DNA of 64,000 nucleotides from Trichosphaerium sp. ATCC 40318 (GCA_038496445.1 JALMLS010000329.1:124001-188000), one strand, 5' to 3'. Numbered from the stretch's first letter, positions 11,644-57,607 are shown. Notes: generated from the sequence alone by a model not told the origin. Translations and numbers: made by a program.

Positions 11644-11722
11644 AGTCAAGTATAAGCACTATTGTTAGAGCGTAATGGAATGTTTTTTTGGTGATTTCAA
11701 CAGGAAGCACGTAGACTTTTTT

Positions 11723-12069
11723 CTGCCTAATTAAAATGCCCAATCTTGGCTAAACATCGACATAGCCCTCATGTTTCGTCCTCCTGAAACAGCGCTGTTT
11801 TATTTTAGCGCTAAGCCTCCTTTTAAAAGGTCACTCCTATTTGTAGCACGTGACTTTCTCCCTTTATGCTCACGTAAAATACTCTATAAGGCTACACTAA
11901 TGGATAGCTTACAGAGTTGCACTAGGTCTACCTATGTCACAAACCGTACTGAAAAAGCAGACGTAGCGCTAGGTCAAATCCACTGTCACATGCAAATTAT
12001 AGATTGAAAGGACGAAACATGTGAGGGCTATGTCGATGTTTAGCCAAGATTTGGTATTTAATTAGGCAG
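11723..12069. mobile_element. Non-autonomous TIR element (MITE-like), ~347 bp
   Basis: About 60-bp imperfect terminal inverted repeats (ctgcctaattaaa..tcttggctaaacatcgacatagccctca..tgtttcgtcct). No clear TSD. Confidence 0.7.
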
Positions 12070-12156
12070 TGTTATTTATACAAACGTATTCAATTGCATA
12101 ACGGAAGAATGTTAAACCCAAACAAGGGTGCAACAAACACTTGTTAATAAATATGT

Positions 12157-12964
12157 TTATTCCGTCCTGAAACTATTAATATCACATTCAATATTAGCGC
12201 ATTCCATTTGCCATTCCCTATCAGGACCTCTATTACATGAGATGAGAATGAGAAGTGCTACGAAATTGTACAAAAATGTACCCATAACTTGACCTGAACC
12301 CTACAATGTAAGGTATCGCTGGAGGGCAATTAATATCCCCTGTCCCTCCAAGTCCTGGAGTAATGTTGAACATGTCTAACAGTAACCATTAACAAAAAAA
12401 CCGCGTTTTCCTATTCTTACTTATCCACGTGTTACCAGTTGACCTACATCTAAACAATCCTGTACGAGTTCTTGTTGTACATTAGTGATCTCAAATCTAC
12501 AGCTGAATAGGCGAACCTGCAACGAAACCTGAATATTCTATCACTATTAAAGCGATCCCATGGAGAACCACTAATAACTGAAACACGCATTAACAATTAA
12601 AAACTAAAAAGTCCAAAGTACAATCAACTGCGTGTCCATCAGAACATGTGTGAGTGAAAGTTCTACCTAGTTCAGACTCAAAATACTCTGGTGAGCCAGT
12701 AAATGATACACGATTATCAGCGCATCTCCACAAGAATTGACGGGCGCCTGTGAAGGCAGTACTACGAGCTCCTGTGAGGGCACCTACAGTGCAAAATCTA
12801 TGCCAATAGTCAAATCTGGGTGTTACACCACCACCGTTGCCAATGGCTTCTACAATCTCCCCACTACAACTTCTACTACTTTGTTATTTTCGTGTAAGGA
12901 TAAACTTGGCGTACAAAGCCATGATGATTACTAGCACTTGACATAAGATGTGTTGATTTAACAT
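12157..12964 (-). CDS. Secreted dermatopontin / amebocyte-aggregation-factor-like protein, 6 exons (not in ORF track)
   Basis: Spliced reading: MLNQHILCQVLVIIMAF|SRSCSGEIV...ARQFLWRC...RTFTHTCSDGHAVDF|ISGSPWDRFNSDRIFRFRCR|TRTGLFRCRSTD|MFNITPG...NCPPAIPYIVGFRSSYG|GPDREWQMECANIECDINSFRTE*. All junctions are GT-AG and in phase. Confidence 0.75.
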
Positions 12965-13585
12965 ATTTGATAGTATTGTTAGAAGTAAAGCGCAGTTCAG
13001 CTGGTTTCTATAATTCACGTGAAGAGCTATTCTATGAATCGACAAGGTCAGTAAATTGCCATGAATACTGTAATTCTCCAAATAAACAAAAAAGGGTTCG
13101 TAAATTGTTAGATCACGTGAATAAGCGGGTAGGTGAATGTTCAACTACTACGACTGCAGGCTTTGACATTGCAATTTCAACCACATTTTAGGCTAGTGAC
13201 TGCATTAAAACACTGCAAATAATAATTTGGAAATAGATTAGCCATGAATTGGAGTTAGTCACAACAGACTTCAGCCGTTTAACAACACTTAACTTGGAGT
13301 ACCATCGAACTTTCAAACTATTGCATCTGCAAATTTTAAAAGTTCGGCTTGATGGCAAGCCCAGAGTCAGATCTTGTGTCAATACTTTGGCAGAAGATCT
13401 GTTTTATTATCAGCTCTGATGATACCGTATTTGGCCACTGGGATACAGGTGTAGCTCCAGCGGAAGTCGTAGTAAGTGACAAATATTCCGAGTTGTTTGC
13501 ATTCATCTTTTTATTGTTAACATTGCGTAAACACTCAATTACTGCCATTTGTGGACTAAATTGAGAAAAAAACAAAGTGACAGAC

Positions 13586-13603
13586 AAGCGTCACGTGACG
13601 CTT
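13586..13603. promoter_or_regulatory. Perfect 18-bp palindrome AAGCGTCACGTGACGCTT (E-box/G-box core)
   Basis: Seen directly, in the divergent intergenic region between the dermatopontin-like gene and PPR paralog A. Function is inferred only. Confidence 0.35.
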
Positions 13604-13707
13604 TACTTTTATGTCTACTTTTTTTTGACATGCAATAATTGCATTGCACTAAACGTAAGTAGACGTTTAGGCACTAATTTCACGCTGAGGCAGAACGAAT
13701 GATTTTC

Positions 13708-14087
13708 TTTGTATTGAATTTTCTGGACTGACTTTCTATCAAAACGCTGTAGCAAGTGCGTTACACACAAGAGCGTAAAATTAAGTGCTCAGCAAGTTTA
13801 TCCGACGTTCACAACACAATTGAGATTGGATTATGATTCATAGAGCGTTTATACGCTCCTACGCGCGTTCAGGGCATGCGACTCGTAAATCTATGTCAGT
13901 ACGTATTATTTTACACGGTTTCCCCGTCATACGGTTATAAATAGATAAATGACGTTTATTGTAGCGTTTACGACCATCACAATATCAACATTATCGCTAC
14001 ACCACAGATGCAGACGTGAAAGATGGTACGGACGTAAAACCTCCTCTCTTGCACCTAAATACGCTTGAATCTTACTCTCAAAATCAG
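13708..14087 (+). repeat. Left arm of ~380-bp inverted repeat (promoter, exon 1, intron 1, exon 2, intron 2 of PPR paralog A)
   Basis: Reverse complement of 17483-17864; the central ~200 bp looks identical. Confidence 0.95.
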
Positions 14088-15608
14088 GAGTGTCGGTGGA
14101 AGGACTGGCTGAGTATTTTTTTGAAAAAATTTTGCTTCAAAAACGTGATGCGACATTTTATTCAAAAAATGTGATATTCTCTCGTAGTTATTACTCCAAG
14201 AAAACCAATTCGGCATCACAAAATCTGCAGCTATTCACAGAGTACCTCGATATGTTCAGAAACTTTGATTTCATGTTTGAAGAGTTTGAAAGCCTCAAGT
14301 CTCAAGGTATACAACTCGAAGTGGGCCTATACGAGAGCATGATTAAACTGTGCAATACTTCGTCTCAAGCATTTCAAATCTTTGATTGCATGATCGATGA
14401 AGGTGTTGAACCAAGTCCTGCTATTTATGAGAGAATGCTCGACATATGCTTGCTTTGCAGTGAACCTAGGATAGCTCTTGACATGATTAAGACTACTGAG
14501 ATTGCTGGCTTTGTTGTAGATATAAGTACATACATAAACACTATGCAGTTTATGATAAGCATAAGGGAACACGATGCTATTATTGAACTTTATGAAGCGA
14601 TATTTGAGAATACAGATTTACAACCTGGTCCAAACATGGTTGATGTAGCAATGAGGGCATACAGATCTAGTGACAGGCCAAAGGAAGCACTTGAATTATG
14701 GTATCAAAATGTTGATAAAGTGCGTAAATTACTTTTTTTTTTTGCAAAGTGAAAAATCATTTAAGTCACGTTAAACCGGGCTGAAAACCTTCCCAACTTC
14801 CGGCTTGAATATGACCTAAAAAAGCAGAAAATTAAAGTGACTGAAACATATGATAAAAATTTGGTTAAAACTTATTATTGAGCTTCTGTGACCGGCAGAA
14901 ATGTGCAAACAAATACTTTTTCGATGTTTCTCAAAATATGAAAAAAAAGAGAAAACTTCAAAGCGTAGTTTCTTTTTCCTTCTTTACCTATTACTTACTT
15001 TCCATTAGATTCAACCAAATAAAACCACACGTGACACTTTATTTATTCTGCTCTTAAAAAACAATATGAAAGCTGAGTTTATTGAACTAGTACATGGAAA
15101 TGAAGAAAACATGGAACAGTCAATTAAATATTCAATTGGTTATTTCAAGAACAAGAAGGACGTGGAAGTAATACTATTTATCTTTTCTAGTCTTAAATCT
15201 CCTAGTAATCATATCTTTTCTGTTACTATGTATGCATTACTAGAGGTAGGAGCACAAGAAGCGCTTGGTGTACTAAAAAAGTGGGACAATGGTTTTACAC
15301 GTCCGCTGTCCTGTGAATTTAAGCTCCGTATCCAAATTAAGCTTGGTAATTATGAAGAAGCAGCAGATACCTTTAAAGCTATGGACAGCGAATATGGGTA
15401 CACAAAACATAATTTGCTGGCAGCAATGGTTGAGGGCTTTAAAAGTAAACAAGATTTGTTGTCTGAAGTTATTGATTCTGTTGAGTTTACTGAAGACCAT
15501 GATGAATCGACCACAGACTCCATAACACGGACAATGGAAGCATCAACAAATTATAATGATATTGTTAGGAAAAAGATTGTTTCTCTTGTTCGCAATACTC
15601 GTAGATAA
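13833..15608 (+). CDS. Divergent PPR-like protein with probable mitochondrial presequence (paralog A), 4 exons
   Basis: MIHRAFIRSYARSGHATRKSMS|RLRPSQYQHYRYTTDADVKDG|VSVEG... then PPR-like helices (AFQIFDCMIDEGVEPSPAIY). Intron positions match paralog C. Confidence 0.8.
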
Positions 15609-16037
15609 AAAAATAAAGAATTTTTTGACATTAGAAGGTTAGAACAGACTTGAAATGATTTTCAGTACATCTTTCTTTGTATCTTTGCCTATATCTTCTG
15701 CAAAATTATCTATTTTGGCCTTTGTTTTTAACGTTTATTTCAAGGGTACATAAACCTTGCACATGGCATTTTCACTCAATTAAGAAATGTATTAAAGTGC
15801 TGTTACAGTAAAAAAAAAAAAAAATTTCTTAGTTATTCTCAGAGACGTCCTAATTGGGTATATAAATTCAAGCTTTCTTGGATTAGTGGAAAATATAACG
15901 TGCAATGTCACCATGTTCAGTATGCATTCTTTCCAAGTATTTCCACAAAGATATTCATTGTGAACTTTACTACGACGAAATACACAAATGTACACTATTA
16001 TCCTACAACTAAGGCCACGTCTCTTTTACACGTATTC

Positions 16038-17737
16038 TCATCTTTCGTGTGCCCTTCTACGTTTCAGAAGGGTTTTTGCTCTAATACTAATGTTACCAAG
16101 CAAACCCTGAGAAACAATATCCTGAAACATATTTTCGTTTTTTGCAAAACCATCAAACAATGCCAACACGGTTTCATCATTTATACCAATACCATATGAT
16201 CCTCTCATTTTCTTTAATACTTGTACTGCTTCTTCATATTTATCAAGTTCACAATAAGCACGTATCTCCATATTACAAGTTGTTATGATATCATTCAATG
16301 TCATTTTGAGGGATGCATCCGGTACTTTATTTCTCAAGTCCCTAATGCCATCTAGCACCCATTTTGGTTTTCCTCTCTTTAACAATATGGATAAGAAGGT
16401 GTTCCATGTCCGTAAATCAGGTGATTTGAAGCAATAAAAAATTTCAGTTAAAGCAACTGGTTGGTATCTTCGGCTCCTTAACAACTTATCGCCAAGATTT
16501 TCTTTTTGTATAAATTCAAAAATAACATCTTTCATATCACTTTTAAGTGAATCATTGTCACTTTTAGATAAAAACTTAGCAAGTGTTCTTACTAGATTTT
16601 CAGTTGCCTTTTTACAAGGTTGTTTCTATTTCAAGTGAATAAGAGACAACAACAAAGAGAAATAAAAAAAAAAAAACCTCCAAAAAATCTTTTCTCTGTT
16701 TTTTCCTACTTTTGTCAAACAAAAAGAACACGTACACCGGTTTTTTTGATATCATTACTTAATTCCATTGCCTCTTTTGGTTTTTCCTTGATTGAATAAG
16801 CCCACATAAGCCAAGCAAAAAATTTAGGTCTATCCAATAAACTTAACTTTAAATCTTCCTCTATCATTTGATAAAGCTCAATTGCCATGTTTATATTATC
16901 ATTGCGACCAGAGCACATAATAAAACAAACTGGTAAGAATGCTTCCGTATTTAGTGGCATGCCAGCATTGAATGCAATCTTAAGCATATCGAAAGTTTTC
17001 CCAACTGCTTCAATAACTCCCCCTTGATGCCACCGTCTCGAGCACTGAAAAAAAACATATTCATAAATTTTGCGTTCTGGCTTAACACCTTGATCGATCA
17101 TGTGTTTAAAAATTTGATATACTTGAGATATAGTATTGCACACTCTAATAACCCTTCTGTACGCGTTCACATTGAGTTTTACACCTTGAGACTTGAGGCT
17201 TTGAAGTTCTTGTAAGGCGAATTCAAAGCTACGAAGTTTTGGAATGTAGTCTTCAAAAACTTGAGACTGTTTGGTTTTTTTTTGTATACCATTGTGATAT
17301 TGTGCCAAATACCACTGCGTATCAGATGGTGTGGTTCCTAAAAACATCTTAAAATTCATCTCTTGTAGACGTAAAACCGGAAAAAAAAACGGGGTTCGTA
17401 CTTATTAAATCCACTTCCACTTTGCCATCGTCTCGTTCTCGTACAACATTAATCTTTTGTTCATCCACCCATGAGTAATTTTCTGGTTTCGAGGGTAAGA
17501 TTCAAGCGTATTTAGGTGCAAGAGAGGAGGTTTTACGTCCGTACCATCTTTCAAGTCCACATCTGTGGTGTAGCGATAATGTTGATATTGTGATGGTCGT
17601 AAACGCTACAATAAACGTCATTTATCTATTTATAACCGTATGACGGGGAAACCGTGTAAAATAATACGTACTGACATAGATTTACGAGTCGCATGCCCTG
17701 AACGCGCGTAGGAGCGTATAAACGCTCTATGAATCAT
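16038..17737 (-). CDS. Divergent PPR-like protein with probable mitochondrial presequence (paralog B), multi-exon
   Basis: Exon 1 identical and exon 2 nearly identical to paralog A. PPR-like VYQIFKHMIDQGVKPERKIY and PDLRTWNTFLSILLKRGKP. Confidence 0.8.
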
Positions 17738-18765: not shown

Positions 18766-20452
18766 ATGAACGCCTTGAACAGCACTTCTAATATTACAGA
18801 TACTCATTGTGATGATAGTGAGTTTCTTACATTTAAGGAGGTTCTATCTGATAATCCAAGGTTTGTACGTATTGATAACGAGTTCTATGGAATAGCTTAG
18901 TGCCAAGACTGCGAAAAAAACCATTTGCTTTGTCACACGTGTTTATGATATTTTGTTAACTTGATCGCGTAGATTGCCTTCATATCTAGTACAACATCTA
19001 TACTACTGATCGTCAGCTATGTTATATGGGCTTATCTGACTTACACTCATTTTCAAGCGAAAAGAACCTCATTGAGGACTCTAAACTTGAAAGTATTCAC
19101 TTTCATACCTGTACGTAACAACAACATATTTCATCTAGTTATTCGGATAAAACAATTTCAAAGTTGCTATTTTTGTTTTACAAACGCAGAAACACGTCCA
19201 AAATATCCTTCCAAACGTTTTTTTTCAAAATGTCCCTTGTGTGGTGACCTGTTACCAAACCAACTTCTTCGCAACACCGAAATATTTTGGAAATTCGTGT
19301 GGCTATTGCCAGTAAACTGTGGGCTAAATTGTCCTCAGATAGAGGCATTTCTATTCCAAAATCCATCACGTGAACTAACACGTGTTCAGATACCTTTTTT
19401 TTTCTTTTACTGCTATGTGTTCTTATTCAAAACTAGGTTAATGCAACGCTTGTATATTTATCTTTCTATCTATTCAACTCAACCTTGACGCTACGCCTTG
19501 CTCGGTTGTCTTTCCAAGCTCTTGTGATACGATGGTTTTTTGAGTCTATTGGTATGTCAACTTAACGGCCGTGTCTTTAACCCTCCCCTGTTAATTATCA
19601 TTCGCTTACGCTTGTAATCTAGTACACGCTTTAGGAGGTTGGAAGAGCGCTTCAGATATACTCACAAGTTTAAAGCCATCAAGGTACATTAGAGAAAACC
19701 TTAGTTTAGTTAACATGTTTGAAGGTTCTATGCTGTCACTCCATTTTGCTGTTGCTGTCGTTGCTCTTGCTTTCCAAAGAAGAACTACACGAGAAGATCT
19801 CTTAAATGGTGTACGTAAATTATAGGATGTTTCACGTGATCTCGTGTATAAGACTTTAGACAACTCATTCAGCGAAATAAACAACTAACTTACGTTCTCA
19901 TTAGGTCATGTTCTAGTGGCTCAATACACTATAATCGCTCCGGCTGCCGCTCTTCTAAGAGTATTACTTGATGAAAACGTGAAATCATTTGATCCAACAT
20001 CCTCAAGCTTCTCAGAAGCAAACATATACATCACAATTGTAAACGCAATTTCATCACTTCTTGCTATTTATGGACTTGCAATTATAAGAACACCAACAGC
20101 AAAAGTACTTACAGACTATGGAATAAGAGTAAAGATTTTTACAGTCAGAGCAATCATTCTCCTATCTGCTATACAACTGCTCATTCTGAGGATTCTAGTT
20201 AATACTGATGTGATCAAAGATGATGATTTATTTAACGCTGAACTTAAAGCTGATTTATGGGATAATTTATTATTGATGTTTGAAATACCTATCATCGCTG
20301 CTGTGTGTGTTTTTATATTCACTTTAGATGACTACGATAAAGTCATCGATAAGAATTCATCTATAAATGGTAACGGCACTGTGTTAAATAGTACAAACAA
20401 TGGAAAGAAACCTAAGAAAGGAGAATCATCTTCAGAAGACAGCAATGTCTAA
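18766..20452 (+). CDS. Organic solute transporter alpha / TMEM184-family membrane protein, paralog 1, multi-exon
   Basis: Multiple transmembrane exons. Last exon AQYTIIAP...YITIVNAISSLLAIYGL...KIFTVRAIILLSAIQ...DNLLLMFEIP matches the OST-alpha family pattern. Confidence 0.75.
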
Positions 20453-20958: not shown

Positions 20959-22360
20959 ATGAACGACACCTCTAATATCACTGACAGTCACTGTATTGAC
21001 GATGATAGTGATTTTCTTACATTCAACGAGGTTTTATCTGATAACCCTGGGTTTGTACGTACCAACACCTATCGATTACGAGTTTTGTTTATTTGACGAT
21101 GAGAACGCGAATAAAACAATAAGAGAATCCTGCGTTTTGACAATTTGTTAATTGTAGAGTGTAGATCGCCGCCACAACCACTATCACGACTATACTCGCA
21201 ATATTGAGCTTCTCTCTATGGGCGTATCTGACGTACAGTCATTTTCAAGCGAAAAGAACATCATTGAGGACTCTAAACTTGAAAGTATTTAGTTTTATAC
21301 CAGTACGTATCAACTACTCTGTCACGTTTTTTTTACGGACACCAACAACGTTAGGTTTATACAATGGTGGTCTATTTATCTTTCTATCTATTCAACTCAA
21401 CACTGACATTAAGTCTCGCTCGGATGGCTTTTCAATCACTTGTGATACGGTGGTTCTTTGAGTCCATTGGTAAAAAAATGAAGATCTTTTTTTTTCTCTG
21501 TTTCGTGTCTTTTGGTTTATCATGTTTATGCTCTTTTCTAGTACACGCGTTGGGAGGTTGGAAGAGCGCTTCAGATATACTTACAAGTTTAAAGCCATCA
21601 AGGTACTCTACAATACTAAAGTCAAGTTATTTAATCGGTCAATATTTCCAGGTATTACGCTGTTCCACCATTATGTTGCTGTTTCCGTTGCTCTTGTTTT
21701 CCAAAGAAATCTCACACGAGAAGGTCTCTTAAATGGCGTACGTTAGGCAAATGTAATATTTCTCTCGTAGACAAAGCATCAAATCACACTATCTTGCGAA
21801 GTCTCACCCACTCTTTAGTATATGTACTAGTGTCTCAATTCACTATCATCGCTCCCGCTGCTGCTCTTGCAAGATTGTTACTAGCCGAAAACTCGAAGTC
21901 ATTTGACCCAGCAGCAACAGACTTTTCTGATTTTAACGTATACATCACAATTGCAAATAACGTTTCATCGATACTTGCTATTTATGGATTAATGATGCTG
22001 AAATCTTCAACTTCAAAAGTGCTAAAAGACTATAGAATACGACCAAAGATATTAACTATACAAAGCCTTATTATTCTATCAAATATACAAATAACTATTC
22101 TACGTATTCTAGTTAATACTGATGTTATCAAAGATGGTGATTTATTCACAGCTGAACTTAAAGCTGACTTGTGGGATAATTTTTTATTGATTATAGAAAT
22201 ACCTATCATCGCTGCTGTTTGTTTCTTTGCCTTCTCTACGGGTGACTATAAAAAGACTATAGACAAGGATGCATCTGCCCAAGGTAATGTGCTACATAGT
22301 AAAAGCGGTGGAAAGACACCTAAGAAAGGAGAATCATCTTCAGAAGACAGCAATGTCTAA
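20959..22360 (+). CDS. Organic solute transporter alpha / TMEM184-family membrane protein, paralog 2
   Basis: Tandem paralog with the same exon structure; start MNDTSNITDSHC, end KKGESSSEDSNV. Confidence 0.75.
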
Positions 22361-22762: not shown

Positions 22763-25589
22763 ATGGATCCCTTAAGGGCCATGTCAAATGGTCAGCGTTC
22801 TTCGCTTATGACCCAAAAAGATTACCAGTTTTCAGAAATGCAGCAAACAGAGACTCCAAAAGCGCCAGGCTGGAACACACAGAACGAATACGCAGAAGAA
22901 GACGCAACTTATGAACCACCAAGCGATCCAAGGCACGTGACAAACTTTAGCAAACCAGAAACGCGTAAAAACCTCTAAAACCTTCATTGCGATAATAAAC
23001 AAAGTCATTTCAACATCACAAAAAGAAGAGGTTTACAATTGCCGCCATGTTTCTTTTTTGATAAAATAGATACCCATAAACCATATGATAGGGTTAAAAG
23101 ATCCCAATATTACTATTATTTCAATCAATCAATGATTTTTTAGAAAACTCTTGCTTCTTTTTTAACTTTTCAACGCGTTTTCAATGTAATTAAGTAAAAC
23201 AGTGTTAAACACTACTCCTTGTAACTTATTATGTCTGATAGACCACGTAAGAGGCGTAGGACTATGAAAACAGTGCCTTCTACGGGTTAGTATTTTTAAA
23301 CTCCCTAATAACCTTCTAGCATCGTCAAGAAGGTCAAATCCTTTGTAATTCCGTTAAACGACGGCGCTTTTTTTAATTTTGATTTTTTATTTTTTGGGAT
23401 TACGCACGTGCTTATTTTTTTTACCATTATTTAGCTGCTACTTCAAAGTATATCCAATATCATTGCAATTATTGTCACAAAGATATAAGCAACGTAGTCA
23501 GAATACGCTCCGCCGTAAGTTTCGGGACGGGAGGTTTTTTTTTGAGTTTTCGTTGCGTGAACTTGCGTGTTGCATGCACCTCTGAAATCATGCTGAATTC
23601 CTTTTTTTTAGGTACCTACAGATTCTGATTTTGATCTATGTGTCGAATGCTTCTCTGCTGGTGTTGAGATTGGAAAGCATAAGAACTGGCATGAGTACAG
23701 AGTAATGGAGAATCTTCACTTTCCTTTCTTTTCTGAGGACTGGGGAGCAGACGAAGAGTTCCTTCTATTAGAGGTACAGAAAACCTTTCACACTTGGTTT
23801 TAATATTACTATTTCCCTGATTCTTCTTAAGGGCCTAGAGATATACGGTATGGAAAATTGGGAAGAAGTTAGTGAGCATGTGAGTACAAAAACAAGAGAA
23901 CAATGTGAGGATCATTACAGAGAATTTTATATTAACTTAGATTGCTGGCCTGAACCAGTACGTCAACACATCAAGTCTTCACGAGTATTCATCGTGGTTA
24001 GGATTTCAGTAATGCCATGGGATCTAAGGAAGAAGTACAAAGGCTGAACGCCGGTGAACCATCAGGAGTAGTGCACCAGTCGCCTAGTACGAATGCTCTT
24101 GGATTAAAGTCAGTACAAGAAATTTGACTGATTTTTTTTAGCACGCAAGACAACAGGAGTTCATGTACCAAAAACAGGAGCATCAGTACCAGTAGTACCA
24201 GAATTATCAGGGTACGTGCCATACTTTTATCACGTGAGCAAGAAACTTACCAAACAATAGATGGATGCCTTTGCGCCATGAATTTGAATATGGTACTCTT
24301 ATTTCTCAGTTAATATTCTTCTTCCTCATTTTAACGTCTTTCTAAGAATGGGATAATGAAGCAGAAAAGACTGTCAAAGATATAGAGTTCGGTCCAGATG
24401 ACACAGAAGAGTCAGAAGGTAAAAAAAAATCACTGAGATGAAAATTGTTTTCTTACAGTTTGACTTTGTAGCACTTAAATTAAAACTGCTTGAAATATAC
24501 AATTGGCGTTTAGAGATACGTGCTAAACATAGGGAATTTGTATTAAAACATAAGCTACATGATACAAAAAAGCGTCAAGTACGTCAACTGAAAATTATGA
24601 AAAAAACAAAAAAGTTTTACTGGTTTTGATGTTTTGATGTTTTGATTCTCACGTATTTTTCACTTTGTGTTTATGCCTATGTTGCATACTTTTAATAAAT
24701 GCAATAAAACTCATTTGTAAAACTAGGCAGATGAAAGGAAGCGAACAAAGAGCGAAAAAGAAATGTATGGTAAAGTAAGAAAATACGTTCAAGTCATGGA
24801 TATGAGTAGCCTAGATAAGCTCTATGAAGGTACTTTCCAACAACAAAAACTCACAAAAAACCTTTAGATAGACACAGACCTATAGCCTTGAACTTACTTT
24901 TTTTTAAGGCCTCGTTAACGAGAACATGTTGAGAGAAAAAATCCTAAAATACCAAAAATACCGAAGCAAAGGCATGAGATCAGTCGCTGAAGGTGAAATG
25001 ATGGACACGTGAGTACTCATTTCCTAACCTTAAAAACTTACCGTTTATATTTCTAACCAATTGTTTCAGATCTTCAAGAAGCTCAGACCCGACTTATGTC
25101 CCAGAACGTACAAGCACGAAAAACGTTTTTTTTTAATTTGAATAATCGTTTAACTGGTTTTCTTCGGTTCAGGGTACACTAGAAGACGTGGAAGACCTTG
25201 TAAAGATACACTTAATGTCAGTGGTAAACCATCATTTGATGCATTATCAAAGAAAGAAGCACAATTCTGCTCAACATACCATCTTTTGCCACATCAATAT
25301 CTTGTTATTAAAGAAAAACTACTTCGAACAGCAATAGAAACAACAGAAGATGGTTTAAGCCTTGGAAAAGAAAAAGCAATAGAAGTATTCCAAAACCTTG
25401 GTAAGACAATTCCATTGTTATAAAGAACTAACAAAGGTTTTTTTTTGTAAACTAGACCCTGTGATTGGACCAGCTGTTTATGAATTTATGTTTGATAGTG
25501 GATGGTTAGGAAGAAAAAAGTTTAATGGAGTTAGTGGTCAATATCCCATTAACGGACATCCGTTAATGTATCCACGTGTTACAAGGTAG
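22763..25589 (+). CDS. ADA2: Transcriptional adaptor ADA2 (ZZ, SANT, SWIRM), multi-exon
   Basis: YHCNYCHKDIS...DFDLCVECFSAGVEIGKHKNWHEYRVM (ZZ), [29 protein letters not shown] (SANT), GWMPLRHEFEYEWDNEAE, and LLPHQYLVIKEKL...VYEFMFDSGWL (SWIRM). The first exon is less certain. Confidence 0.92.
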
Positions 25590-25689
25590 TAGTTTATTAT
25601 TAGTAAGGATAGTTTATATGTACACGTGATAGAGATGTAGTAGTAATTAAAACGCAAACTTTTTTTTTTCAAGCTACTTTTGTTTATGT

Positions 25690-25945
25690 TTATCTCAAGG
25701 TTAATTGTATGAACACCAGCTAATGCTTTGACTCCATCTGTTCTTTGTCTACACCGAAATAGATCAATAGTATGGACTCCATCTAAAGCTTTAACACCTT
25801 CATCTGTTATTTGATTGTTAATTGCAATTACTTGAACACAAGCCAAGGTTGCAAACCGCATATTTAGCCAAGGTTGGAAACGTTGAAAGCGCGAGTATTT
25901 TCTCCAATATTTCACGTGTTATAATACTGAATCAATTCTTTCAAA
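25690..25945 (-). pseudogene. Truncated, frameshifted F-box-LRR relic
   Basis: IITREILEKIL (F-box-like) in one frame, then ITDEGVKALDGVHTIDLFRC..DGVKALAGVHTINL in another. No intact gene. Confidence 0.75.
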
Positions 25946-27423: not shown

Positions 27424-28311
27424 TTATTCATCCTCTATTGTGATACTCGCTATTTCACCTTGGACAATCACACAACTTACTATGAGTTCTCCACTTTCAT
27501 GCCATAGTTTTACCTCGCCATGTTGCTTATCATCAACAAAAAAACTCTTTACCTCGATTTGTCCATTATCATGCCACTCTTTGTATTCACCATTTTTTTT
27601 ATCATCTTTCCATGTACTTTGTATTTTAAGCTGTCCATTCTCATACCAAACCTTAGACTCTCCATCTTGTTTACCGTTAATAAAATAACTGATTGACATG
27701 AGTTGACCGCTATCATACCACCTCTTACGCTCGCCATTTAGTTCACCATCAATGTACATAGTTTCTATGCTGAGTTGACCATTCTCGTGCCAAATCTTTA
27801 CCTTTCCATCTATTTTATCATCATGCCAGTGTATATGTGATTTAAGTTGTCCGTTCTCATGCCATTGTTTGCTTTCATCAGTTTTCTTGTTTGCAATTAA
27901 CACTCTATGTACTCTTATTTGTCCGTTCTTATACCATCCTTTGTGTTCACCATTTGCTTTACTATCAACAAACATACTTTGTACTTCAAGTTGTCCATTG
28001 TCATACCATATTTTATACAAGCCATTCATCTTACCATTAACAAACATCATTTGTTCTCTAAGTTGACCATCTTTATACCACTCATTGTATAATCCATTTA
28101 ACATACCATCAACCTTCATTACATGCACCTTAATCTCTCCGCTTTTATACCACTGAAGCCATTGTCCACTAGGTTGTAGTTTTTCATTGAAATGTGTGTT
28201 CATTGCAGCTGTCTTTGAAAGTGTATGAAACTTTGTGAATGCTTCAATACCGAAGGTACAAATGTACTTTTGAATTTCTCTAGGAAGATCTAGTACTGTA
28301 CAAACAGACAT
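27424..28311 (-). CDS. Intronless F-box-like + MORN-variant (YwqK-antitoxin-like) repeat protein
   Basis: VLDLPREIQKYI at the N-terminus, then about ten 24-aa repeats of GxxKxWYxNGQLxxxxxxxxGKxx. Confidence 0.85.
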   Translation of the reverse strand: MSVCTVLDLPREIQKYICTFGIEAFTKFHTLSKTAAMNTHFNEKLQPSGQWLQWYKSGEIKVHVMKVDGMLNGLYNEWYKDGQLREQMMFVNGKMNGLYKIWYDNGQLEVQSMFVDSKANGEHKGWYKNGQIRVHRVLIANKKTDESKQWHENGQLKSHIHWHDDKIDGKVKIWHENGQLSIETMYIDGELNGERKRWYDSGQLMSISYFINGKQDGESKVWYENGQLKIQSTWKDDKKNGEYKEWHDNGQIEVKSFFVDDKQHGEVKLWHESGELIVSCVIVQGEIASITIEDE

Positions 28312-30842: not shown

Positions 30843-32773
30843 ATGGGCATTTGCTCGGGAACTGAGGGAAAAGATGTTAGAACAGAAGAGTCGAAAGGCA
30901 TCGATTTAGATTTAAAGAAGGCTAGAAAGATAGCCAAGTACAGAATTAAGGTCTTAATACTTGGTACAAGCGCCTCAGGCAAATCTACAATTGTGAAGCA
31001 AGTTCGTTTGCAGTACGGAACGGGATTTTCGAGCCACGAACGGGAGAACTTTAGAGACATTGTACATTTAAATATCTTCACGGGGATAAAATACCTAATT
31101 GATCGAGCTGAACAACTCTCGTACAAGATATTGCGAAAGAACAAAAAGGCAAAGGCTAGCCTCCTTGCAGCCAATCTATACGACCCCGGAGCGAGTCGTA
31201 CTACTCTTTTGGAGGCTTGTAAGACTCTTTGGAGCGATCAAGGTAAGTGCGAAACGATCACAATTTAAAAGCTCCAAAACCTTAAAACTACTCTCCGCTA
31301 AACCATTATTTGCTTTTTCCAGTCTGCTATTTTAGCCAAATTGCCACCGTTTCAATTTAATAAATTTTTTTTTTTGTCCAAATTTGCGTTTGGAGTCGTG
31401 TTGCAAGAGGTATTCCCTCCGCTGACTATTTGAACGTCTAATTTGAACAAAATAACCCTTTTTTAACCTCCTCAAATACGTTTTTTACTGCGGCTTTTTT
31501 TTTTTCTATATTTTTGACACCACGTAGGTATACAAAAGTGCTTTGAGCAACGTTGTGAAGATCCAAATGCTCTGCACTTGAAATATTGGATGGACAACGT
31601 AATTGATAAACTCATCGAAAAAGACGATTGGATGCCTACTGACGACGATATTATCTTCGCCCGACAGCGTACAACTGGTATTGTCGAAGCAAAATTTCAG
31701 CAAAAACAGTACGCGCTTTCTTCGTTTTACTTTGGCCTACGACAGTATCGAATACCTCCGATATACTTTTATAAACGCTACATTGACCTTCCTCTCCTCT
31801 CTCGTTCCACAAAATGCTAACTAATTTTAATTAAAGGTACGAATGGCTTCTAGTTGATGTTGGTGGTCAGAAAACAGAAAGGAGAAAGTGGATTCATTGT
31901 TTTGATGGGTAAGGAGCTTGATTGATTTTTTTTTTTTTTCTCCTCTTCGTCAATAATTTTTTCTCCTTGTCTCTAACCCTGTGATAGCATGACTGCAGTA
32001 ATATATGTCGCTGCATCGAACGAGTGGGATATACCTAGCGAGGAAACTGAAGGGGCTACTAAAATGCAAGAGTCGTTAGGAGTATGGCGCCAGGTACGTT
32101 TAAGAGTTTGTTCAGGAATTATATAATTTGTGAACCTTTTTAATTTCTGAAAAGCCAAAAAAAAACTTTGATAGATTATTGCTTGTTTCGTTTGTACTAA
32201 TAATGCCTCCATAGCACGTTAATTCACCTGCGTTTGCCGAAACATGTATTATTCTTTTTTTAAACAAGATGGACCTCTTAAACGAGAAGCTAGCGGTTGT
32301 TGACCTTCAAGAAACATTCTCAGAGTACACAGGTGGTGCAGATGGTAAAATGGTGCGTGTTTTAAGCCTCTTCACGTTGTCGTAAACAGCCGATATAAAA
32401 ATATAATTCAAACGCTGTTCTCGTTAGAAGAAAACCCTCTCTTACCGCTTTTTAGGCATTAGAATTTATAAAAAATCAATATTTGGATGCTGTAGATAGG
32501 GATGGCCACCCTGCATCTATATACGTGCATCCAACATGCGCTATTGATAAAGAACAAATACGTGCGTTGTTTGAAGAACTTTACTTGATTTTTTATTTTA
32601 TTGCTGATCAAGGAGACTATTGAAATGCACTGCGTCTCGCCTTGAGTTTTTTTTAATTTTATTTTTACGTAAACCTTTCCACTACAAAATACTCAAGTTT
32701 GGTTATAGGCGCCGTATTTGGGATGGTCATGGACAACATCTTTAAAGAGAGACTACGCGTGTCTGGCCTGTAA
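30843..32773 (+). CDS. Heterotrimeric G-protein alpha subunit, multi-exon
   Basis: MGIC (myristoylation/palmitoylation site), KVLILGTSASGKSTIVKQ, RQRTTGI, DVGGQKTERRKWIHCFD, FLNKMDL, TCAID, C-terminus LRVSGL*. Confidence 0.95.
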
Positions 32774-40922: not shown

Positions 40923-41510
40923 GTGTGAGGTGCGTGGGTTTTGTTTAAATTGATTGGTCTTAATTAAAACAGTTGATTGACGCTAGTTGACGAGATCTCG
41001 TTCAAACAATTTCGGCGTTTTTTTCATTTTTTAGTCGAAAAATATGTTTTTGTTAGAAAACACAAGGTACCTTTTTGTAGTTTTTAAATTAGTATTCAAA
41101 GATCTCATACTACCTTTCAAAAACTTCCAGATGATGAACTATCGTTTGTCGTGTAATGTCTGCGCTGATTTCTTACTTTTTTCGTAACTCTCATTTTTTA
41201 GGACCTTAGCAGTTTCTTGTATGCAAGTGAATTACATGACATTTCAGTAAAGGTAAATACGAAATCATACACGAGTATACAGTTTTTAACACAATTTAAG
41301 GGCGTTATACAGGCATAGTTGCAAAAAAACAGTTTATTACAAAAGGGCAATTACAGTGTCTTCAGAACCTTGCATGTGACTGGTTCTAGCTTCAAGTAGA
41401 GATTCTGTAGCGTTACATTGGTGCTCACTGCAACCCATGGATTATTAAACGAGTTTTTAAACAAATCTGGGTTTTTGCTGTATTTATTCAACAAATTTGA
41501 TCCATCTTAT

Positions 41511-43220
41511 CTAACCGTAACTTCCTATCCCATACAACTTCATTATCTTTCTTAACATATAGTACACGATGCATAGGAATATCTGACTGACTAAATACAA
41601 GAGCTTAGCAAAAAAACCCCAAAACCCACGTGACTTGTTCACGAACAAAAAAACATGGAAAAAAAAAAGTTGTTCTGTTGGAAGTTGAACAAGCATACCT
41701 CATAAACTCTTCATATGGTACTTCTGTAGGACCTACAAATCTATCTCTGTAGCAAACAATCCAATCGAAATTAATAAATTTAGTATCCCATTTTATTCTA
41801 CTCAAGATTTCTGCAGCAGGCGTAAGACGCTCTTTAGTAGTAGGTAATGAATCAACCCCTAATGAATATATCACTGATGGATTACGTCATTTAAATAAGT
41901 TTGGATTGTACTTGATCGACGCTCTGCATGTTCATCCAGCACTGCTTTTGTAACATTTTGAATATGCTTTGAAAAAGTAAGTAACAACATCCCGCGAAAT
42001 TCCAAGGTTACCTTGAATCTGTCTGGTCCTAGTTTTTTACCTCCATACCTATACATCCATAAGTAATTTAGAATGCATAATTGAGTAGTAAGGATAACAA
42101 TCAAAGGATATACCATCGCGTAACAACCTACAAACATTTTTAGAAAGAAACCAATAAAAAAAACTAAAGTTAAAGTACCACAAGAACACCGAGTTCTTTG
42201 CGTAACTGAAGTGTCTTCAATATAGTATCACCACCACCATGTTCTCCATCGTCATCTCTGTATTCAGCCTAAATTAAAAACATAAAAAACCGCACGTGCA
42301 AAACATCCACGGCGTACAATTGTTTGATTTTTCTTCCGCAATCTGTAGGCATACATGTTGTGTGTTGCAGCGTTTATCCTCTTATCACTTAAAAGATCAT
42401 CCATAACAGAATCTACTTCGTCCGTGGATTGGACAACAGCCAAGTGAGCAAGGAACCGACCTTACCACTATTGTTAAAAAAATATGAAACTTTTTCAATG
42501 AATCAAAAGCTATCTCACTTTTTCTATCAGTCACTGCTTGACCTACCCACGTTTCAACGTGTGGTGGTTGTTCTGTAGAATCTTCTTCATTTTCTGTTTG
42601 CACTGGTTCCATTACTGCCTCAGGAGCTTTCTTGGGCTTCGATTTCCTCATGTAATGTGGTGTTATTGATTCTTCTGTTTCACCCAAATGATCAAGCAAT
42701 TCTTCTCTCAACCATTCTATCCACTCGTACACTGTTCCTTGAGGTTCATTTTCGTTTGAAATATCTGTAAGCTTCTCTGATACCTTTGTTTAAACGTGTT
42801 AGATAGTAGTTGTCAGTGTCAACACCGTTTTAAGCTTTTTCTTAACTCACCTTGTCTAAATGTTCTCTGGACATCCACTCAGCGTTTATCTATACGTGAG
42901 AGGAGTTATTACGCAGTTTCAATTATTAAACGTGTCATTGCCTTGTAGGTTGGTGTGGAATTAGGGAAATCGTCACTGTACAGCCAACTAAACTCTATTA
43001 CAAGGTCTTCTGTCACCTTGACGTTTATCTAACGTAATTAGCGTATTTTAAGCATTAGAAAGCTTATAAGGGTACCCCATAGCTTTTTTGATCGTTAACG
43101 ATAAGTTCTTCGCCGTATACTGCTTGTAACGTTTCTATTTCTTCAAGTTGCTCTTCGCACGCTAAACTCCACTTATTACACTTTATTAAAATGTAGTCAA
43201 TGCATACCGGGCTCCGCCAT
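41511..43220 (-). CDS. IMPACT: IMPACT-family protein (RWD + UPF0029) with C-terminal MJ1316/DUF504 domain
   Basis: MAEPACEEQLEEIETLQAVY (RWD); VTDRKS.FLAH, INAATHNMYAYR, DDDGEHGGG, RYGGKKLGPDRFKHI (IMPACT ancient domain); then AAEILSRIKWD...VCYRDRFVG...DIPMHRVLYVKKDNEVVWDRK (MJ1316). Confidence 0.85.
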
Positions 43221-54269: not shown

Positions 54270-55231
54270 ATGAATACAAACACCCAGACCAATGCTACAT
54301 ATTACAGCTCCCTCTGGAGATACATTTCGATATTATTGATTTAGACGCCAGCGTTTATTTAAAATGGCCTCTGTTATCTAAGCAAACAGCCATAACAACG
54401 AGATTTGATTCTGAGATGAACAAACATGGGAAATGGCTTCACCATAAACTTTACTCTGACACCTTAGTTCCAATACACTCTGATGACAGTAAACGTGATT
54501 CGACACAAAAAGTACAAAGAGTTTATCGTCAAGCGTGTTGGATGAATGGACGCCTACATGGAGAGTACAAAAGCTGGCACAGTAATGGGAAGCTAGAGGA
54601 AGAGAGCCTTTATGTTAATGGTTTACAAGATGGAGAGTCCAAGAAGTGGTACAGCAATGGACAGTTGTTTACTAAGTGCGTTTACGTTGCTGCTGCGGTC
54701 CAAGGAGAACACAAACAGTGGTATGACAATGGTCAAATAGAACGTCAATCTAATTATGTTAATGGTAAACAACACGGAGAACAACTAATATGGACGTATG
54801 ATGGTAGATTATGGACTAAGTCTTATTTTGCCAACGGTGAACTAGAAGGAGAGTACCAGAGGTATCATAGTCATGGTGGATATATGGAACGTTGTAACTA
54901 TATAAAGGGTAAAAGACAAGGAGATTACAAGAAATGGCATAGGAATAACCAATTGGAACATCAAGTGCAATACGTCAATGGTGAAAGACAAGGAGAGAGC
55001 AAGATGTGGTACGAAGATGGTACAATTTTTTCAATTTGTTACTATGTCAATGATAAGCTCGAAGGAGAGTACCAGAGTTGGCATACCAATGGTAATATAA
55101 TGGAAAAAAGTCATTATGTTAATAATACACGTGATGGAGAATACAAGCTGTGGCAATACAGTAATGGCAAATTGGAACAGCATCTCATTTTTTCAAAAGG
55201 TGCACTTGTTAAAACTCTAAAGTATTATTAA
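54270..55231 (+). CDS. F-box-like + MORN-variant repeat protein; F-box segment out of frame with the first ATG
   Basis: ORF 54416-55231 holds the 24-aa repeats. The same frame extends upstream as ILQLPLEIHFDII...LSKQTA with no ATG; the ATG at 54270 is in another frame. Confidence 0.75.
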
Positions 55232-55475: not shown

Positions 55476-56417
55476 TTAGTATCTTGTATTTATTTCTGTT
55501 GGTACACACCCAATCTCATGAATGGCCTCGTACGATATATATGTCCCTCTAATATCAATAACACATACCCCTTTGAGGTGTTTAATACACTTTTCTGTAA
55601 CCCACGTATTTCTGAGACCAATAGTATGAACACCAGCCAAAGCAATAACACCTTCATCTCGTACATTGGTGAAGTTCAAGTTAATACTATGTACACCAGC
55701 TAGTGCTTTGATACCATCACAAGTCACATTAGTTCTATGTAAACTAATCGTGTGTACCCCTTTGAGCGCTATCACTCCTTCATTGGTCACCTGAGTACCG
55801 GAGAGAATAATAGTATGAACACCTGCCAAGGCTTTGATGCCGACATCGGTAACATATGTCCTTGTAAGCTTAATCGAATGTACACCTTTCAAAGCGCTGA
55901 CACCTCGATCTCCTACAGATGTAGAAGATAAATTGATATCATAAACACCTTTCAGCAGTTCTATTGATGCATCTGTTACAGCTGTACAAGATACATCAAT
56001 CGTATGTACACCAACAAGCTCCTTAACACCATCATCACTAACATCAGTGCATCTAAGATTAATAGTATGTACTCCTCTTAGAGCTTTGATACTACTATCT
56101 TTTACACGTGTACAACTGAGGTCTATAGAATATACACCCTTAAGAGACTGTATAGCTTCAGAAATCTGGTTCTTTGGTACATCGCTTATAATTAATATAT
56201 TTGTATTCTTCAAAATGCCTTTGTGTTTTGGTATTTGTAATGCATCTGAAATGTTTCGTATTGTTATTGTTTCGTATCCTACAATATCGTGGATGATACT
56301 ACAAAGTAACGAGCATGTTTGAGCAGCTTCAAAACGCCATTTGGATGTGTGATGAAGAATTAAGCACAACATCTCCGTAGGGAGCTCTAATAGAGCCGCT
56401 TCGTGTTGTTGCGCCAT
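55476..56417 (-). CDS. Intronless F-box + LRR protein (paralog of 499-1704)
   Basis: LLELPTEMLCLILH...AQTC...HDIVGY, then 21-aa LKGVHTIxLxxTxVTDxGxKA repeats. First ATG at 56417. Confidence 0.85.
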   Translation of the reverse strand: MAQQHEAALLELPTEMLCLILHHTSKWRFEAAQTCSLLCSIIHDIVGYETITIRNISDALQIPKHKGILKNTNILIISDVPKNQISEAIQSLKGVYSIDLSCTRVKDSSIKALRGVHTINLRCTDVSDDGVKELVGVHTIDVSCTAVTDASIELLKGVYDINLSSTSVGDRGVSALKGVHSIKLTRTYVTDVGIKALAGVHTIILSGTQVTNEGVIALKGVHTISLHRTNVTCDGIKALAGVHSINLNFTNVRDEGVIALAGVHTIGLRNTWVTEKCIKHLKGVCVIDIRGTYISYEAIHEIGCVPTEINTRY

Positions 56418-57607
56418 TAAAAACGTGCTAAAGAATGTATTTGGTATCACGTTTATTTAGGTTGTATTATAGTACCTAATATTGTCTTGTTGGTTCTACA
56501 CCTAACTGTACACACGTGACTTTTTATAAATTACTGAATACCATTGACTAGGATTTACCACTAAGTATTGTATGTATCATGCAAGTTAGCAAAACTTTGC
56601 ACCTTTTTGCTGTTTGTGCCTTTTGGTTCTCGTGAATGACAGATCTTGCTATCTTGGGATCTTGTCAGCTCTGCAAAAAACAAAATCCACATATGCAATG
56701 CACTATTATTGCGACACCACGTGTTTGAAATCATCAGTATGTTATTTGGTACATCAGCGAATGTAGTTCTGTTGACATCTCTTATGACCTCTAAGGTCCA
56801 ACACTTGTCTCATATACTCTAAATTATTATTGCGTACACTCAGCGCAAGATACTTTGGAAGCGCTTGAAATTTTCTTTTTTGGTTTTAATGTTGTCTTTA
56901 CTCCTCTCTACGCCTGAATGCCAGCGTTCGCACGTGGTGCTAGTACTTAACATGTAAAAAACCAATATTAATTAGCGCTCGTTTTCATGGCTCCTTGTAG
57001 TGAGTAGTAATGACAGCGCAAATACTGATACGTATTGTCGGATGTGACTTTGACACATTGCTTTTCATCTTGCATTAACGTACATAAGGTCGGCAAGCAA
57101 AGCACGATGTATTGAGATATAGGATGCATTCACATTGCTGTGGTTCCACAAGTTGTTGTCAAAGCTGTCAGTTCTTGCGAGAACTAACAAAAGTTACAAA
57201 CTATGACAGAACTTGCAAGATCTTACAGAGTTCTTGTAAGATCTTACACTTTGATACTTCTGCCAAACTTGAATGATACGGACAATGTCGGTGCCCGTTC
57301 CTACATGTACCTGACTTTATGGATACCTGTTCCCCAATTGGTTTGCACTGTAAAATGGTCCCCCAAAAAAGGGTTTGTTTTACAGTATGTGTGGATTGGC
57401 TGTATGGAATGCGAGTCATAAAATGCCAGAACTCACGCTCATCGAACACTTGGACTAATTATTTTGATTGTACCGAGTTTCTTTGAATCACTGTGAGTGG
57501 TTTCACACTTAAGTTGGTGCATGATTTTTTTAAGCGGATAAACAACTGTTTACAGCTATTTTCCAAACCATCGTGATCACATGGCAACCTTGACGAAAAA
57601 AAACGGG

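What the first reader, a model, noticed from the sequence alone, without database searches (positions are those of the whole stretch)
41511..43220. IMPACT fused to an MJ1316 RNA-end-recognition domain, switchable by a 38-nt intron
Seen: after the IMPACT domain (...DEHAERRS) a 38-nt GT-AG intron (41874-41911) puts an MJ1316/DUF504 domain in frame, and that domain has no ATG of its own. Retaining the intron adds 13 codons and a stop, giving a normal-length IMPACT. Known: IMPACT/Yih1 binds GCN1 through RWD and dampens GCN2 signalling; MJ1316 domains (as in LENG9) are predicted to recognise 2',3'-cyclic-phosphate RNA ends in RNA-repair systems. Inference: one protein coupling ribosome-stall signalling to sensing of cleaved tRNA/rRNA/mRNA, possibly with two isoforms. 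I do not know this fusion from characterised proteins.
Basis: partly seen in the sequence, partly recalled or inferred. Interest (0 to 1): 0.76.

Follow-up and report, generated by a model that had tools for sequence, protein, structure and literature searches.

The report
IMPACT gene with MJ1316 RNA-end tail
This is a real 12-exon gene for an IMPACT/Yih1-type translation regulator with an extra C-terminal MJ1316 domain, a predicted reader of cut RNA ends; the same uncharacterised fusion occurs in the slime mould Physarum and several environmental eukaryotes, and the 38-base intron at the joint looks ordinary, not like a switch.

Summary
On the minus strand, 43220-41488, twelve exons give a 368-codon reading frame. 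Exon-by-exon Pfam scans find RWD, UPF0029 (IMPACT) and MJ1316; each of the two MJ1316 exons passes the curated cut-off. Intron 10 (41911-41874) is 38 nt, GT-AG, phase 1. The MJ1316 exons have no usable ATG. Retaining the intron adds 13 codons and a stop.

The fusion is not unique. At least eight proteins have the same three domains: one Physarum polycephalum transcript and seven environmental ones. Four more are N-truncated. In several contigs UPF0029 runs into MJ1316 as one uninterrupted reading frame. In two fused pairs MJ1316 is the most conserved part. The window keeps all 11 near-invariant MJ1316 residues.

The "switch" reading has no specific support. All 11 introns give an early stop if retained, and relatives make the fused form without any intron at the joint.

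Most likely this is a constitutive three-domain IMPACT variant of an amoebozoan-like lineage. It probably ties GCN1/ribosome association to RNA-end binding; that function is inferred, not shown. No paper describing the fusion was found. Interest is moderate. The source organism was not identified; it is not human.

The parts
43208..43220 (-). Exon 1: ATG plus 4 codons and 1 nt (MAEP-)
   Evidence: Sequence reading and phase check. It is the only ATG that reaches the RWD frame, through a 46-nt GT-AG intron.
43076..43161 (-). Exon 2: start of RWD
   Evidence: Pfam RWD positions 1-26, 20.2 bits. tblastn of IMPACT relatives aligns here.
42942..43028 (-). Exon 3: RWD middle with an FP...P motif. 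The acceptor could instead be at 43017/43016, which is also in frame.
   Evidence: tblastn with P0042; phase check.
42851..42889 (-). Exon 4: RWD, preceded by a GC-AG intron (42941-42890)
   Evidence: P-to-W spacing is identical to the Physarum protein P0032. The other donors tried by eye do not keep the frame.
42519..42783 (-). Exon 5: last RWD helix, acidic/basic linker, start of UPF0029 (..TDRK)
   Evidence: Pfam RWD positions 85-112; tblastn.
42318..42460 (-). Exon 6: UPF0029 core (ATHN..AYR)
   Evidence: Pfam UPF0029 30.3 bits, above the cut-off of 27. 48-58% identity to relatives.
42179..42268 (-). Exon 7: UPF0029 (DDGE..GG)
   Evidence: Pfam UPF0029 positions 51-78; tblastn.
42114..42127 (-). 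Exon 8: 14-nt micro-exon (VVTR + TG of W)
   Evidence: Needed to restore the family's VVTRW(Y/F)GG motif. Reading on from E7 or past E8 hits stops.
42012..42048 (-). Exon 9: UPF0029 (YGGKKLGPDRFK)
   Evidence: tblastn; phase check.
41912..41966 (-). Exon 10: C-terminal helix of UPF0029 and start of the linker (...DEHAERRS)
   Evidence: tblastn; phase check.
41874..41911 (-). Intron 10: 38 nt, GT-AG, phase 1, in the inter-domain linker
   Evidence: Removing it gives a KHI-to-RIKWD spacing of 44 residues, against 38-44 in relatives.
41699..41873 (-). Exon 11: linker and N-terminal half of MJ1316 (..RIKWD..YRDRFVG..E)
   Evidence: Pfam MJ1316 29.8 bits, above 26.3; alignment A2.
41488..41590 (-). 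Exon 12: C-terminal half of MJ1316 (IPMHRV..VVWDR) and stop TGA 41490-41488
   Evidence: Pfam MJ1316 28.8 bits, above 26.3; alignment A2.
41483..41488 (-). AATAAA overlapping the stop codon: likely poly(A) signal of the fused mRNA
   Evidence: Sequence reading. The role is inferred.

Best explanation
The locus is one gene for a constitutive three-domain protein of 368 aa: an N-terminal RWD domain, the UPF0029 'ancient' domain of IMPACT/Yih1, a roughly 25-residue variable linker, and a C-terminal MJ1316 domain. Intron 10 is an ordinary short spliceosomal intron that happens to lie in the linker. The fused protein is the normal product, as in Physarum polycephalum and several uncultured, probably amoebozoan, eukaryotes. 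These points are shown: the exon structure, domain identities, conserved architecture and purifying selection on the tail. How it works is inferred. By analogy with Yih1/IMPACT, the RWD domain should dock on GCN1, which sits on stalled or collided ribosomes and otherwise activates GCN2, and UPF0029 should contact the ribosome. The MJ1316 tail is predicted in the literature to recognise 2',3'-cyclic-phosphate RNA ends. It would add affinity for a cleaved RNA (mRNA cut at a stalled ribosome, or a nicked tRNA or rRNA). IMPACT would then be recruited to, or held on, ribosomes that carry damaged RNA, and would locally tune GCN1-GCN2 signalling or hand the RNA end to repair or decay.
For: Gene model. 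tblastn of seven fused relatives lines up with every exon and spans the E10/E11 and E11/E12 junctions with matching spacing. Domains. The same architecture was verified by Pfam in P0007, P0014, P0032 (a Physarum polycephalum transcript in EukProt), P0033, P0034, P0035 and P0037, and is precomputed for P0031. N-truncated UPF0029+MJ1316 proteins: P0036 and P0038-P0040. Uninterrupted UPF0029-to-MJ1316 frames occur on L001, L002, L004 and L006; L004 ends in an A-run 67 nt after the stop. The window keeps all 11 near-invariant MJ1316 residues. Selection: for P0014/P0031, dN/dS is 0.14 in MJ1316, 0.27 in the IMPACT part and 2.3 in the linker. For P0035/P0037, dN is 0.044 in MJ1316 against 0.265 in the IMPACT part. 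An AlphaFold model of P0033 (pLDDT 89.6) shows three folded modules, with a long helix at 238-271 leading to a compact alpha/beta MJ1316 at 279-345. Its first two modules match Yih1 6bqi, YigZ and RWD domains. Background: Yih1 competes with Gcn2 for Gcn1 (PMC4503747). GCN1 binds disomes and swaps RWD partners (PMC10931611). [quoted passage not shown] Other MJ1316 partners seen here are poly(A)-polymerase-like enzymes, 2H phosphoesterase and CCCH fingers.
Against: There is no transcript evidence from the window's own organism, so splicing of intron 10 is inferred from homology only. The RNA-end specificity of MJ1316 is, as far as I could find, a computational prediction. No solved structure of the domain turned up and no binding study was found. 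Two related proteins (L008 ORF 39-1043, L009 ORF 2782-3810) have C-terminal tails that no longer match the Pfam model and lack the DRF and HR motifs, so the tail is dispensable or repurposed in some lineages. Close relatives without any tail exist: L003/P0041 and the dictyostelids P0042 and P0045.
Confidence: 0.7

Rival explanations
1. Intron 10 is a regulated switch. Splicing gives IMPACT-MJ1316, and retention gives a 289-aa ordinary IMPACT; both would be functional isoforms whose ratio changes with stress.
For: Retention does give a stop after 13 codons and a product of normal IMPACT length. At 38 nt it is the shortest of the 11 introns. The intron sits exactly between the two modules.
Against: All 11 introns give an early stop if retained, after 2-46 codons, so the property is generic. 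Donor GTA is shared with 8 of 11 introns. Relatives make the fused protein from an uninterrupted frame and so cannot use such a switch. The retention stop lies 172 nt upstream of the E11/E12 junction. By the usual rule this would make the transcript a target of nonsense-mediated decay rather than a stable isoform (inference from general knowledge). No AATAAA lies in the intron. The one inside E11 (41797-41792) is simply the codons of the conserved SRIKWD motif.
Confidence: 0.08
2. The MJ1316 exons are a separate gene or an untranscribed remnant downstream of an ordinary IMPACT gene. On this view the apparent fusion is an artefact of reading the DNA.
For: The best single match of E11 in the large library is a stand-alone 83-aa MJ1316 protein (P0001), on a eukaryote-like contig with no IMPACT within 6 kb. 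Stand-alone genes therefore exist.
Against: There is no start codon for the domain. Only 38 nt separate it from E10, and the splice phases are compatible. All near-invariant residues are intact. The same fusion is seen as single transcripts or frames in at least eight other proteins. A poly(A) signal appears only after E12.
Confidence: 0.03
3. The fusion is real, but the tail does not read RNA ends here. It could act as a protein-protein or autoregulatory module, for example masking the RWD or UPF0029 surface, or it could bind another ligand.
For: RNA-end recognition by MJ1316 is not experimentally established in anything I could retrieve. There is no solved structure. Tails in L008 and L009 have lost the signature motifs yet are kept as a tail.
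Against: The signature residues shared with MJ1316 domains of RNA-repair enzymes (PAP-like, 2H phosphoesterase) are all kept in the window and in the fused clade, and they evolve under strong constraint. That argues for the same biochemical activity as in those contexts.
Confidence: 0.17

Closest known systems
IMPACT / Yih1 (yeast Yih1 structure 6bqi; human IMPACT, 320 aa)
   Same: An N-terminal RWD is followed by a UPF0029 'ancient' domain with the family motifs ATHN..AYR, DDGE..G and RW(Y/F)GG..LG.DRFK.
   Different: Yih1 and IMPACT end shortly after UPF0029. Here a linker and a roughly 70-residue MJ1316 domain follow. Binding to GCN1, actin or ribosomes was not tested here.
Physarum polycephalum transcript 11324 product (EukProt; P0032, 366 aa), with environmental kin P0007, P0014, P0031, P0033, P0034, P0035, P0037
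   Same: Identical three-domain order and nearly the same length, 338-368 aa. The linker length is comparable.
   Different: Identity to the window's exons is only about 30-58%. Those sequences are intron-free as held. None is characterised.
MJ1316 domains of RNA-repair-type proteins: poly(A)-polymerase-like + MJ1316 (P0008, P0013, P0024, P0027), MJ1316 + AKAP7/2H phosphoesterase (P0026, LENG9-like), CCCH + MJ1316 (P0021)
   Same: The same Pfam domain with the same near-invariant residues.
   Different: The partner there is an RNA-end-modifying enzyme. Here the partner is a non-enzymatic translation regulator.
C12orf65-type release-factor domain fused to MJ1316 (Burroughs and Aravind 2019, PMC6514570)
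   Same: A ribosome-associated quality-control module carries an MJ1316 domain, and the authors propose coupling of ribosome rescue to RNA damage.
   Different: The partner is different (a peptidyl-hydrolase, organellar), and there is no RWD or GCN1 link.

Membership tests
IMPACT/Yih1 family | N-terminal RWD domain | tested here: met
   Pfam RWD positions 1-26 on E2 (20.2 bits) and 85-112 on E5. Each exon alone is below the whole-domain cut-off of 22.8, as expected for pieces. E2-E5 align to the RWD of relatives.
IMPACT/Yih1 family | UPF0029 (Impact_N) domain with its conserved motifs | tested here: met
   E6 scores 30.3 bits, above the cut-off of 27. E7-E10 align to relatives with DDGE, RWYGG and LGPDRFK.
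IMPACT/Yih1 family | Binds GCN1 and inhibits GCN2 | not testable with these tools
   Known for Yih1/IMPACT from papers.
MJ1316 (PF04457; DUF504/UPF0248) | Match to the family model above the curated cut-off | tested here: met
   E11 scores 29.8 bits (model positions 2-41) and E12 28.8 bits (model positions 56-75), against a cut-off of 26.3.
MJ1316 (PF04457; DUF504/UPF0248) | Near-invariant residues (WD; Y.DRF.G..E; P.HR; W) | tested here: met
   All 11 columns that are at least 90% conserved in alignment A2 are kept in the window's two exons.
MJ1316 (PF04457; DUF504/UPF0248) | Recognition of 2',3'-cyclic-phosphate RNA ends | not testable with these tools
   This is a prediction quoted in PMC6514570. 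No structure and no binding paper were found.
Regulated intron-retention switch | The intron differs from its neighbours in a way that points to regulation (frame-preserving, or uniquely giving a clean stop) | tested here: not met
   All 11 introns give a stop on retention. The splice sites are typical of the gene.
Regulated intron-retention switch | Both spliced and retained transcripts, or both proteins, are observed | not testable with these tools
   No transcript data exist for the source organism. No close relative is in the protein libraries (best identity about 50%).
RWD-UPF0029-MJ1316 fusion clade | The same domain order in one polypeptide in other organisms | tested here: met
RWD-UPF0029-MJ1316 fusion clade | A single evolutionary origin that includes the window's gene | tested here: inconclusive
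   Tree of the IMPACT part: the backbone is unresolved, the fused label needs 3 changes, and one origin is not excluded. The window's exons E5 and E6, entered as separate rows, fall among fused and dictyostelid sequences, outside a well-supported clade of 8 unfused sequences.

The most novel reading that the evidence does not exclude
The MJ1316 tail lets an IMPACT protein read 2',3'-cyclic-phosphate ends produced when mRNA, tRNA or rRNA is cut at stalled or collided ribosomes. RNA damage would then feed directly into the GCN1-GCN2 stress pathway, or IMPACT would recruit repair to such ribosomes. That would be a physical link between RNA-damage sensing and the integrated stress response, and it would also hint at what the enigmatic UPF0029 domain does on the ribosome.
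Probability: 0.2. Interest if true: 0.75.

Novelty: new variant of a known kind. Interest (0 to 1): 0.5.

Why it matters
IMPACT/Yih1 is a conserved regulator whose physiological role and 'ancient' domain are still poorly understood. Domain fusions are among the best clues to function. Here an RNA-end-recognition domain is permanently attached to IMPACT, kept under strong constraint in a whole lineage. That suggests IMPACT acts where RNA is cleaved on ribosomes. It parallels the reported MJ1316 fusion to a ribosome-rescue factor. Physarum, which has the same fusion, is a culturable organism in which the idea can be tested. The claim should not be oversold. The architecture already sits unnoticed in public sequence collections. 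The function of MJ1316 is predicted, not shown. The intron 'switch' has no support.

Tried and rejected
**Source organism.**
- No Rfam family was found in the window.
- An exact look-up of a complete 295-aa window ORF found nothing.
- A word search with a 506-aa ORF gave one weak hit.
- The organism stays unidentified. It is an AT-rich (37% GC), intron-rich eukaryote with PPR, G-alpha, OST-alpha, F-box and LRR genes. It is not human.

**Literature on the fusion.**
- Four searches found nothing on it.
- The key paper on MJ1316 (Burroughs and Aravind 2016, PMC5062991) is not held. I cannot exclude that it lists this architecture in a figure.

**Other searches that gave little.**
- A word search restricted to the MJ1316 part of P0014 found only its near-copy.
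- For the fold of MJ1316, the domain model (pLDDT 82.5) has no significant PDB neighbour. Neither a single sequence nor a profile finds a solved relative.
- I looked for hidden MJ1316 exons after the unfused gene on L003, and for IMPACT exons upstream of the stand-alone MJ1316 on L005. There were none.
- The tree meant to decide between one and several origins is unresolved.

- The spliced protein was never joined.
- The whole 368-aa model therefore went neither to the protein libraries nor to structure prediction. P0033, a natural relative, was modelled instead.

Full report
**What is in the sequence**

The feature lies on the minus strand. Reading 43300-41400 and checking lengths and phases by script gives a 12-exon gene. 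It runs from ATG 43220 to TGA 41490-41488 and covers 1107 coding bases, or 368 codons.

The eleven introns are 38-108 nt long. Ten are GT-AG. Intron 3 (42941-42890) is GC-AG. Exon 8 is a 14-nt micro-exon.

E10 ends with ...DEHAERRS. Reading on through the intron gives 13 more codons and a TGA at 41873-41871, which would make a 289-aa protein.

In the frame of E11 there is a TGA inside the intron. The only in-frame ATG is four codons before the end of the exon. The last two exons therefore cannot be translated on their own. An AATAAA overlaps the final stop (41488-41483). The next gene on this strand starts about 570 nt further on (ATG at 40922).

The window has 36-39% G+C throughout. Its tiny introns and its PPR, G-alpha, OST-alpha, F-box and LRR genes mark it as a protist-like eukaryote, not human.

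**How the spliced model was handled**

Every scan, search and alignment used single exons by reference. The joined 368-aa model was therefore not searched or folded.

**Domain identity**

Pfam was run exon by exon.

| Exon | Family | Score | Model positions |
|---|---|---|---|
| E2 | RWD | 20.2 bits | 1-26 |
| E5 | RWD | 13.6 bits | 85-112 |
| E6 | UPF0029 | 30.3 bits (cut-off 27) | 4-45 |
| E7 | UPF0029 | 13.3 bits | 51-78 |
| E11 | MJ1316 | 29.8 bits (cut-off 26.3) | 2-41 |
| E12 | MJ1316 | 28.8 bits (cut-off 26.3) | 56-75 |

In an alignment of 27 MJ1316 sequences, the window's two exons keep all 11 columns that are at least 90% conserved: WD, Y.DRF.G..E, P.HR and W.

**Is the fusion real, and is it unique?**

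The claim rests on the presence or absence of relatives, so I ran the exhaustive library search with E11. It gave 27 hits, none above about 50% identity. The window's organism and its close kin are therefore absent from the libraries.

Two hits (P0007, 349 aa; P0014, 359 aa) carry RWD + UPF0029 + MJ1316. A word search with an alignment of them (A1) added more:

- P0031.
- P0032, named in EukProt as a Physarum polycephalum transcript.
- P0033, P0034, P0035 and P0037, with all three domains.
- P0036 and P0038-P0040, which have UPF0029 + MJ1316 but a truncated N-terminus.

I confirmed the three domains by Pfam for P0032-P0035 and P0037.

The DNA held for several of these shows one uninterrupted frame from UPF0029 into MJ1316. 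This holds for L001 and L002 (1.2-kb contigs with untranslated ends), for L004 (3.9 kb, with two other genes) and for L006. L004 ends in an A-run 67 nt after the stop.

tblastn of these proteins on the window reproduces every exon. It bridges the E11/E12 intron. It also gives a linker of the same length as in the relatives: 44 residues from KHI to RIKWD, against 38-44. The fusion is thus real and recurrent.

Close unfused relatives also exist. These are P0041 on L003, with nothing MJ1316-like in the 480 nt that follow, and the dictyostelids Acytostelium and Cavenderia.

A scan of metagenome contigs added two proteins whose C-terminal tails resemble MJ1316 by eye. They have lost the DRF and HR motifs and no longer match Pfam (L008, L009).

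The best single match of E11, P0001, is a stand-alone 83-aa MJ1316 protein with no IMPACT within 6 kb.

**Is the tail functional?**

Codon comparison of two fused pairs (Nei-Gojobori):

| Pair | MJ1316 | IMPACT part | Linker |
|---|---|---|---|
| P0014/P0031, dN/dS | 0.14 | 0.27 | 2.3 |
| P0035/P0037, dN (dS saturated in MJ1316) | 0.044 | 0.265 | 0.958 |

The tail is the most constrained part, and the linker is free to vary.

An AlphaFold model of P0033 was built on 39 aligned sequences (pLDDT 89.6, pTM 0.60). It shows three folded modules. The last UPF0029 helix extends through residues 238-271, and a compact alpha/beta MJ1316 unit follows at 279-345. Foldseek matches the first two modules to Yih1 (6bqi), YigZ/TTHA1053 and RWD domains (sequence level).

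The MJ1316 module alone has no significant PDB neighbour.

**The 'switch'**

Nothing sets intron 10 apart.

- All eleven introns lead to a stop when retained, after 2-46 codons.
- Its GTA donor is the commonest in the gene.
- 38 nt is only slightly below the 45-52-nt cluster of the other introns.
- Relatives produce the fused form without an intron at the joint.
- The retention stop lies 172 nt before the last exon junction. By the general rule this marks a transcript for nonsense-mediated decay (inference).
- The AATAAA inside E11 (41797-41792) is just the codons of the conserved SRIKWD motif.

Regulated retention cannot be excluded without RNA data, but there is no positive evidence for it.

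**Evolution**

A tree of the IMPACT part was built with fused, unfused and diverged-tail proteins. The window's E5 and E6 were entered as separate rows. The backbone is unresolved.

The fused label is clustered, needing 3 changes against a shuffled mean of 9.3, and a single origin is not excluded. Fused sequences, the dictyostelids and the window's exons all lie outside a well-supported clade of eight unfused sequences.

Given the Physarum member, an origin within Amoebozoa with later losses is the simplest reading. It remains an inference.

**Mechanism**

These points are shown: one gene, three intact domains, and a conserved and constrained architecture.

These points come from established knowledge:

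- Yih1/IMPACT competes with Gcn2 for Gcn1 through its RWD domain (PMC4503747).
- GCN1 sits on collided ribosomes and exchanges RWD partners, and IMPACT binds ribosomes (PMC10931611).
- MJ1316 is described as recognising 2',3'-cyclic RNA ends. It is fused in eukaryotes to RNA-repair domains and to a C12orf65-type ribosome-rescue factor (PMC6514570).

The rest is inference. The tail would give IMPACT affinity for a cleaved RNA end on or near a stalled ribosome. That would localise or retain IMPACT there, damping GCN2 activation or helping to hand over the RNA. I put about 0.85 on the structural statement and about 0.3 on this particular mechanism.

**Novelty and verdict**

The fusion is not a one-off of this window. 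It is an uncharacterised but recurrent variant of IMPACT, already present unremarked in public collections; one JGI entry is merely labelled 'UPF0248 family'. No paper describing it was found, but the main MJ1316 paper could not be read.

It is a useful functional clue for IMPACT biology and is testable in Physarum. Interest is moderate (0.5). The 'switchable' part of the title is not supported.

Noticed in passing
window 42114-42127 (-): A 14-nt micro-exon (E8) carries VVTR and two bases of the W codon of the conserved VVTRW(Y/F)GG motif. It is flanked by 51- and 65-nt introns.
   Followed up: partly
window 42890-42941 (-): Intron 3 of the gene uses a GC donor (AAG|GCAATG...TATAG). It is supported by identical P-to-W spacing in the Physarum protein.
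   Followed up: partly
window 7544-8032 and 8916-9404 (+): A tandem pair of 162-aa ORFs with near-identical signal-peptide-like N-termini and conserved cysteines. The first has no Pfam match; the second was not scanned.
   Followed up: no
window 9829-17359, both strands: A cluster of at least six ORFs that look like paralogous pentatricopeptide-repeat proteins. PPR was confirmed for 9832-10557.
   Followed up: partly
window 19916-20452 and 21794-22360 (+): Tandem paralogous ORFs. The first matches the OST-alpha / Solute_trans_a family, and both end in the same KKGESSSEDSNV tail.
   Followed up: partly
window 499-1716, 25538-25915, 55476-56450 (-); 27424-28311 (-), 54416-55231 (+): Repeat-protein families. 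One group is F-box-like N-termini with 'GVHTI.L' LRR_6 repeats (ORF 502-1716). The other is ORFs made of 'W..NGQ' MORN-like repeats, judged by eye only.
   Followed up: partly
L008 39-1043 and L009 2782-3810: Environmental IMPACT proteins whose C-terminal tails resemble MJ1316 in outline (IKW..., ...LHRL...W) but have lost the DRF/HR signature and no longer match Pfam. They may be decaying or repurposed tails.
   Followed up: partly
L005 6001-6252: The closest match to the window's E11 is a stand-alone 83-aa MJ1316 gene with its own ATG. It lies on a 12-kb eukaryote-like contig with no IMPACT within 6 kb.
   Followed up: partly
window 30843-31268 (+): First exon of a G-protein alpha subunit gene with an N-terminal MGxxxS myristoylation-type start (Pfam G-alpha).
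   Followed up: no
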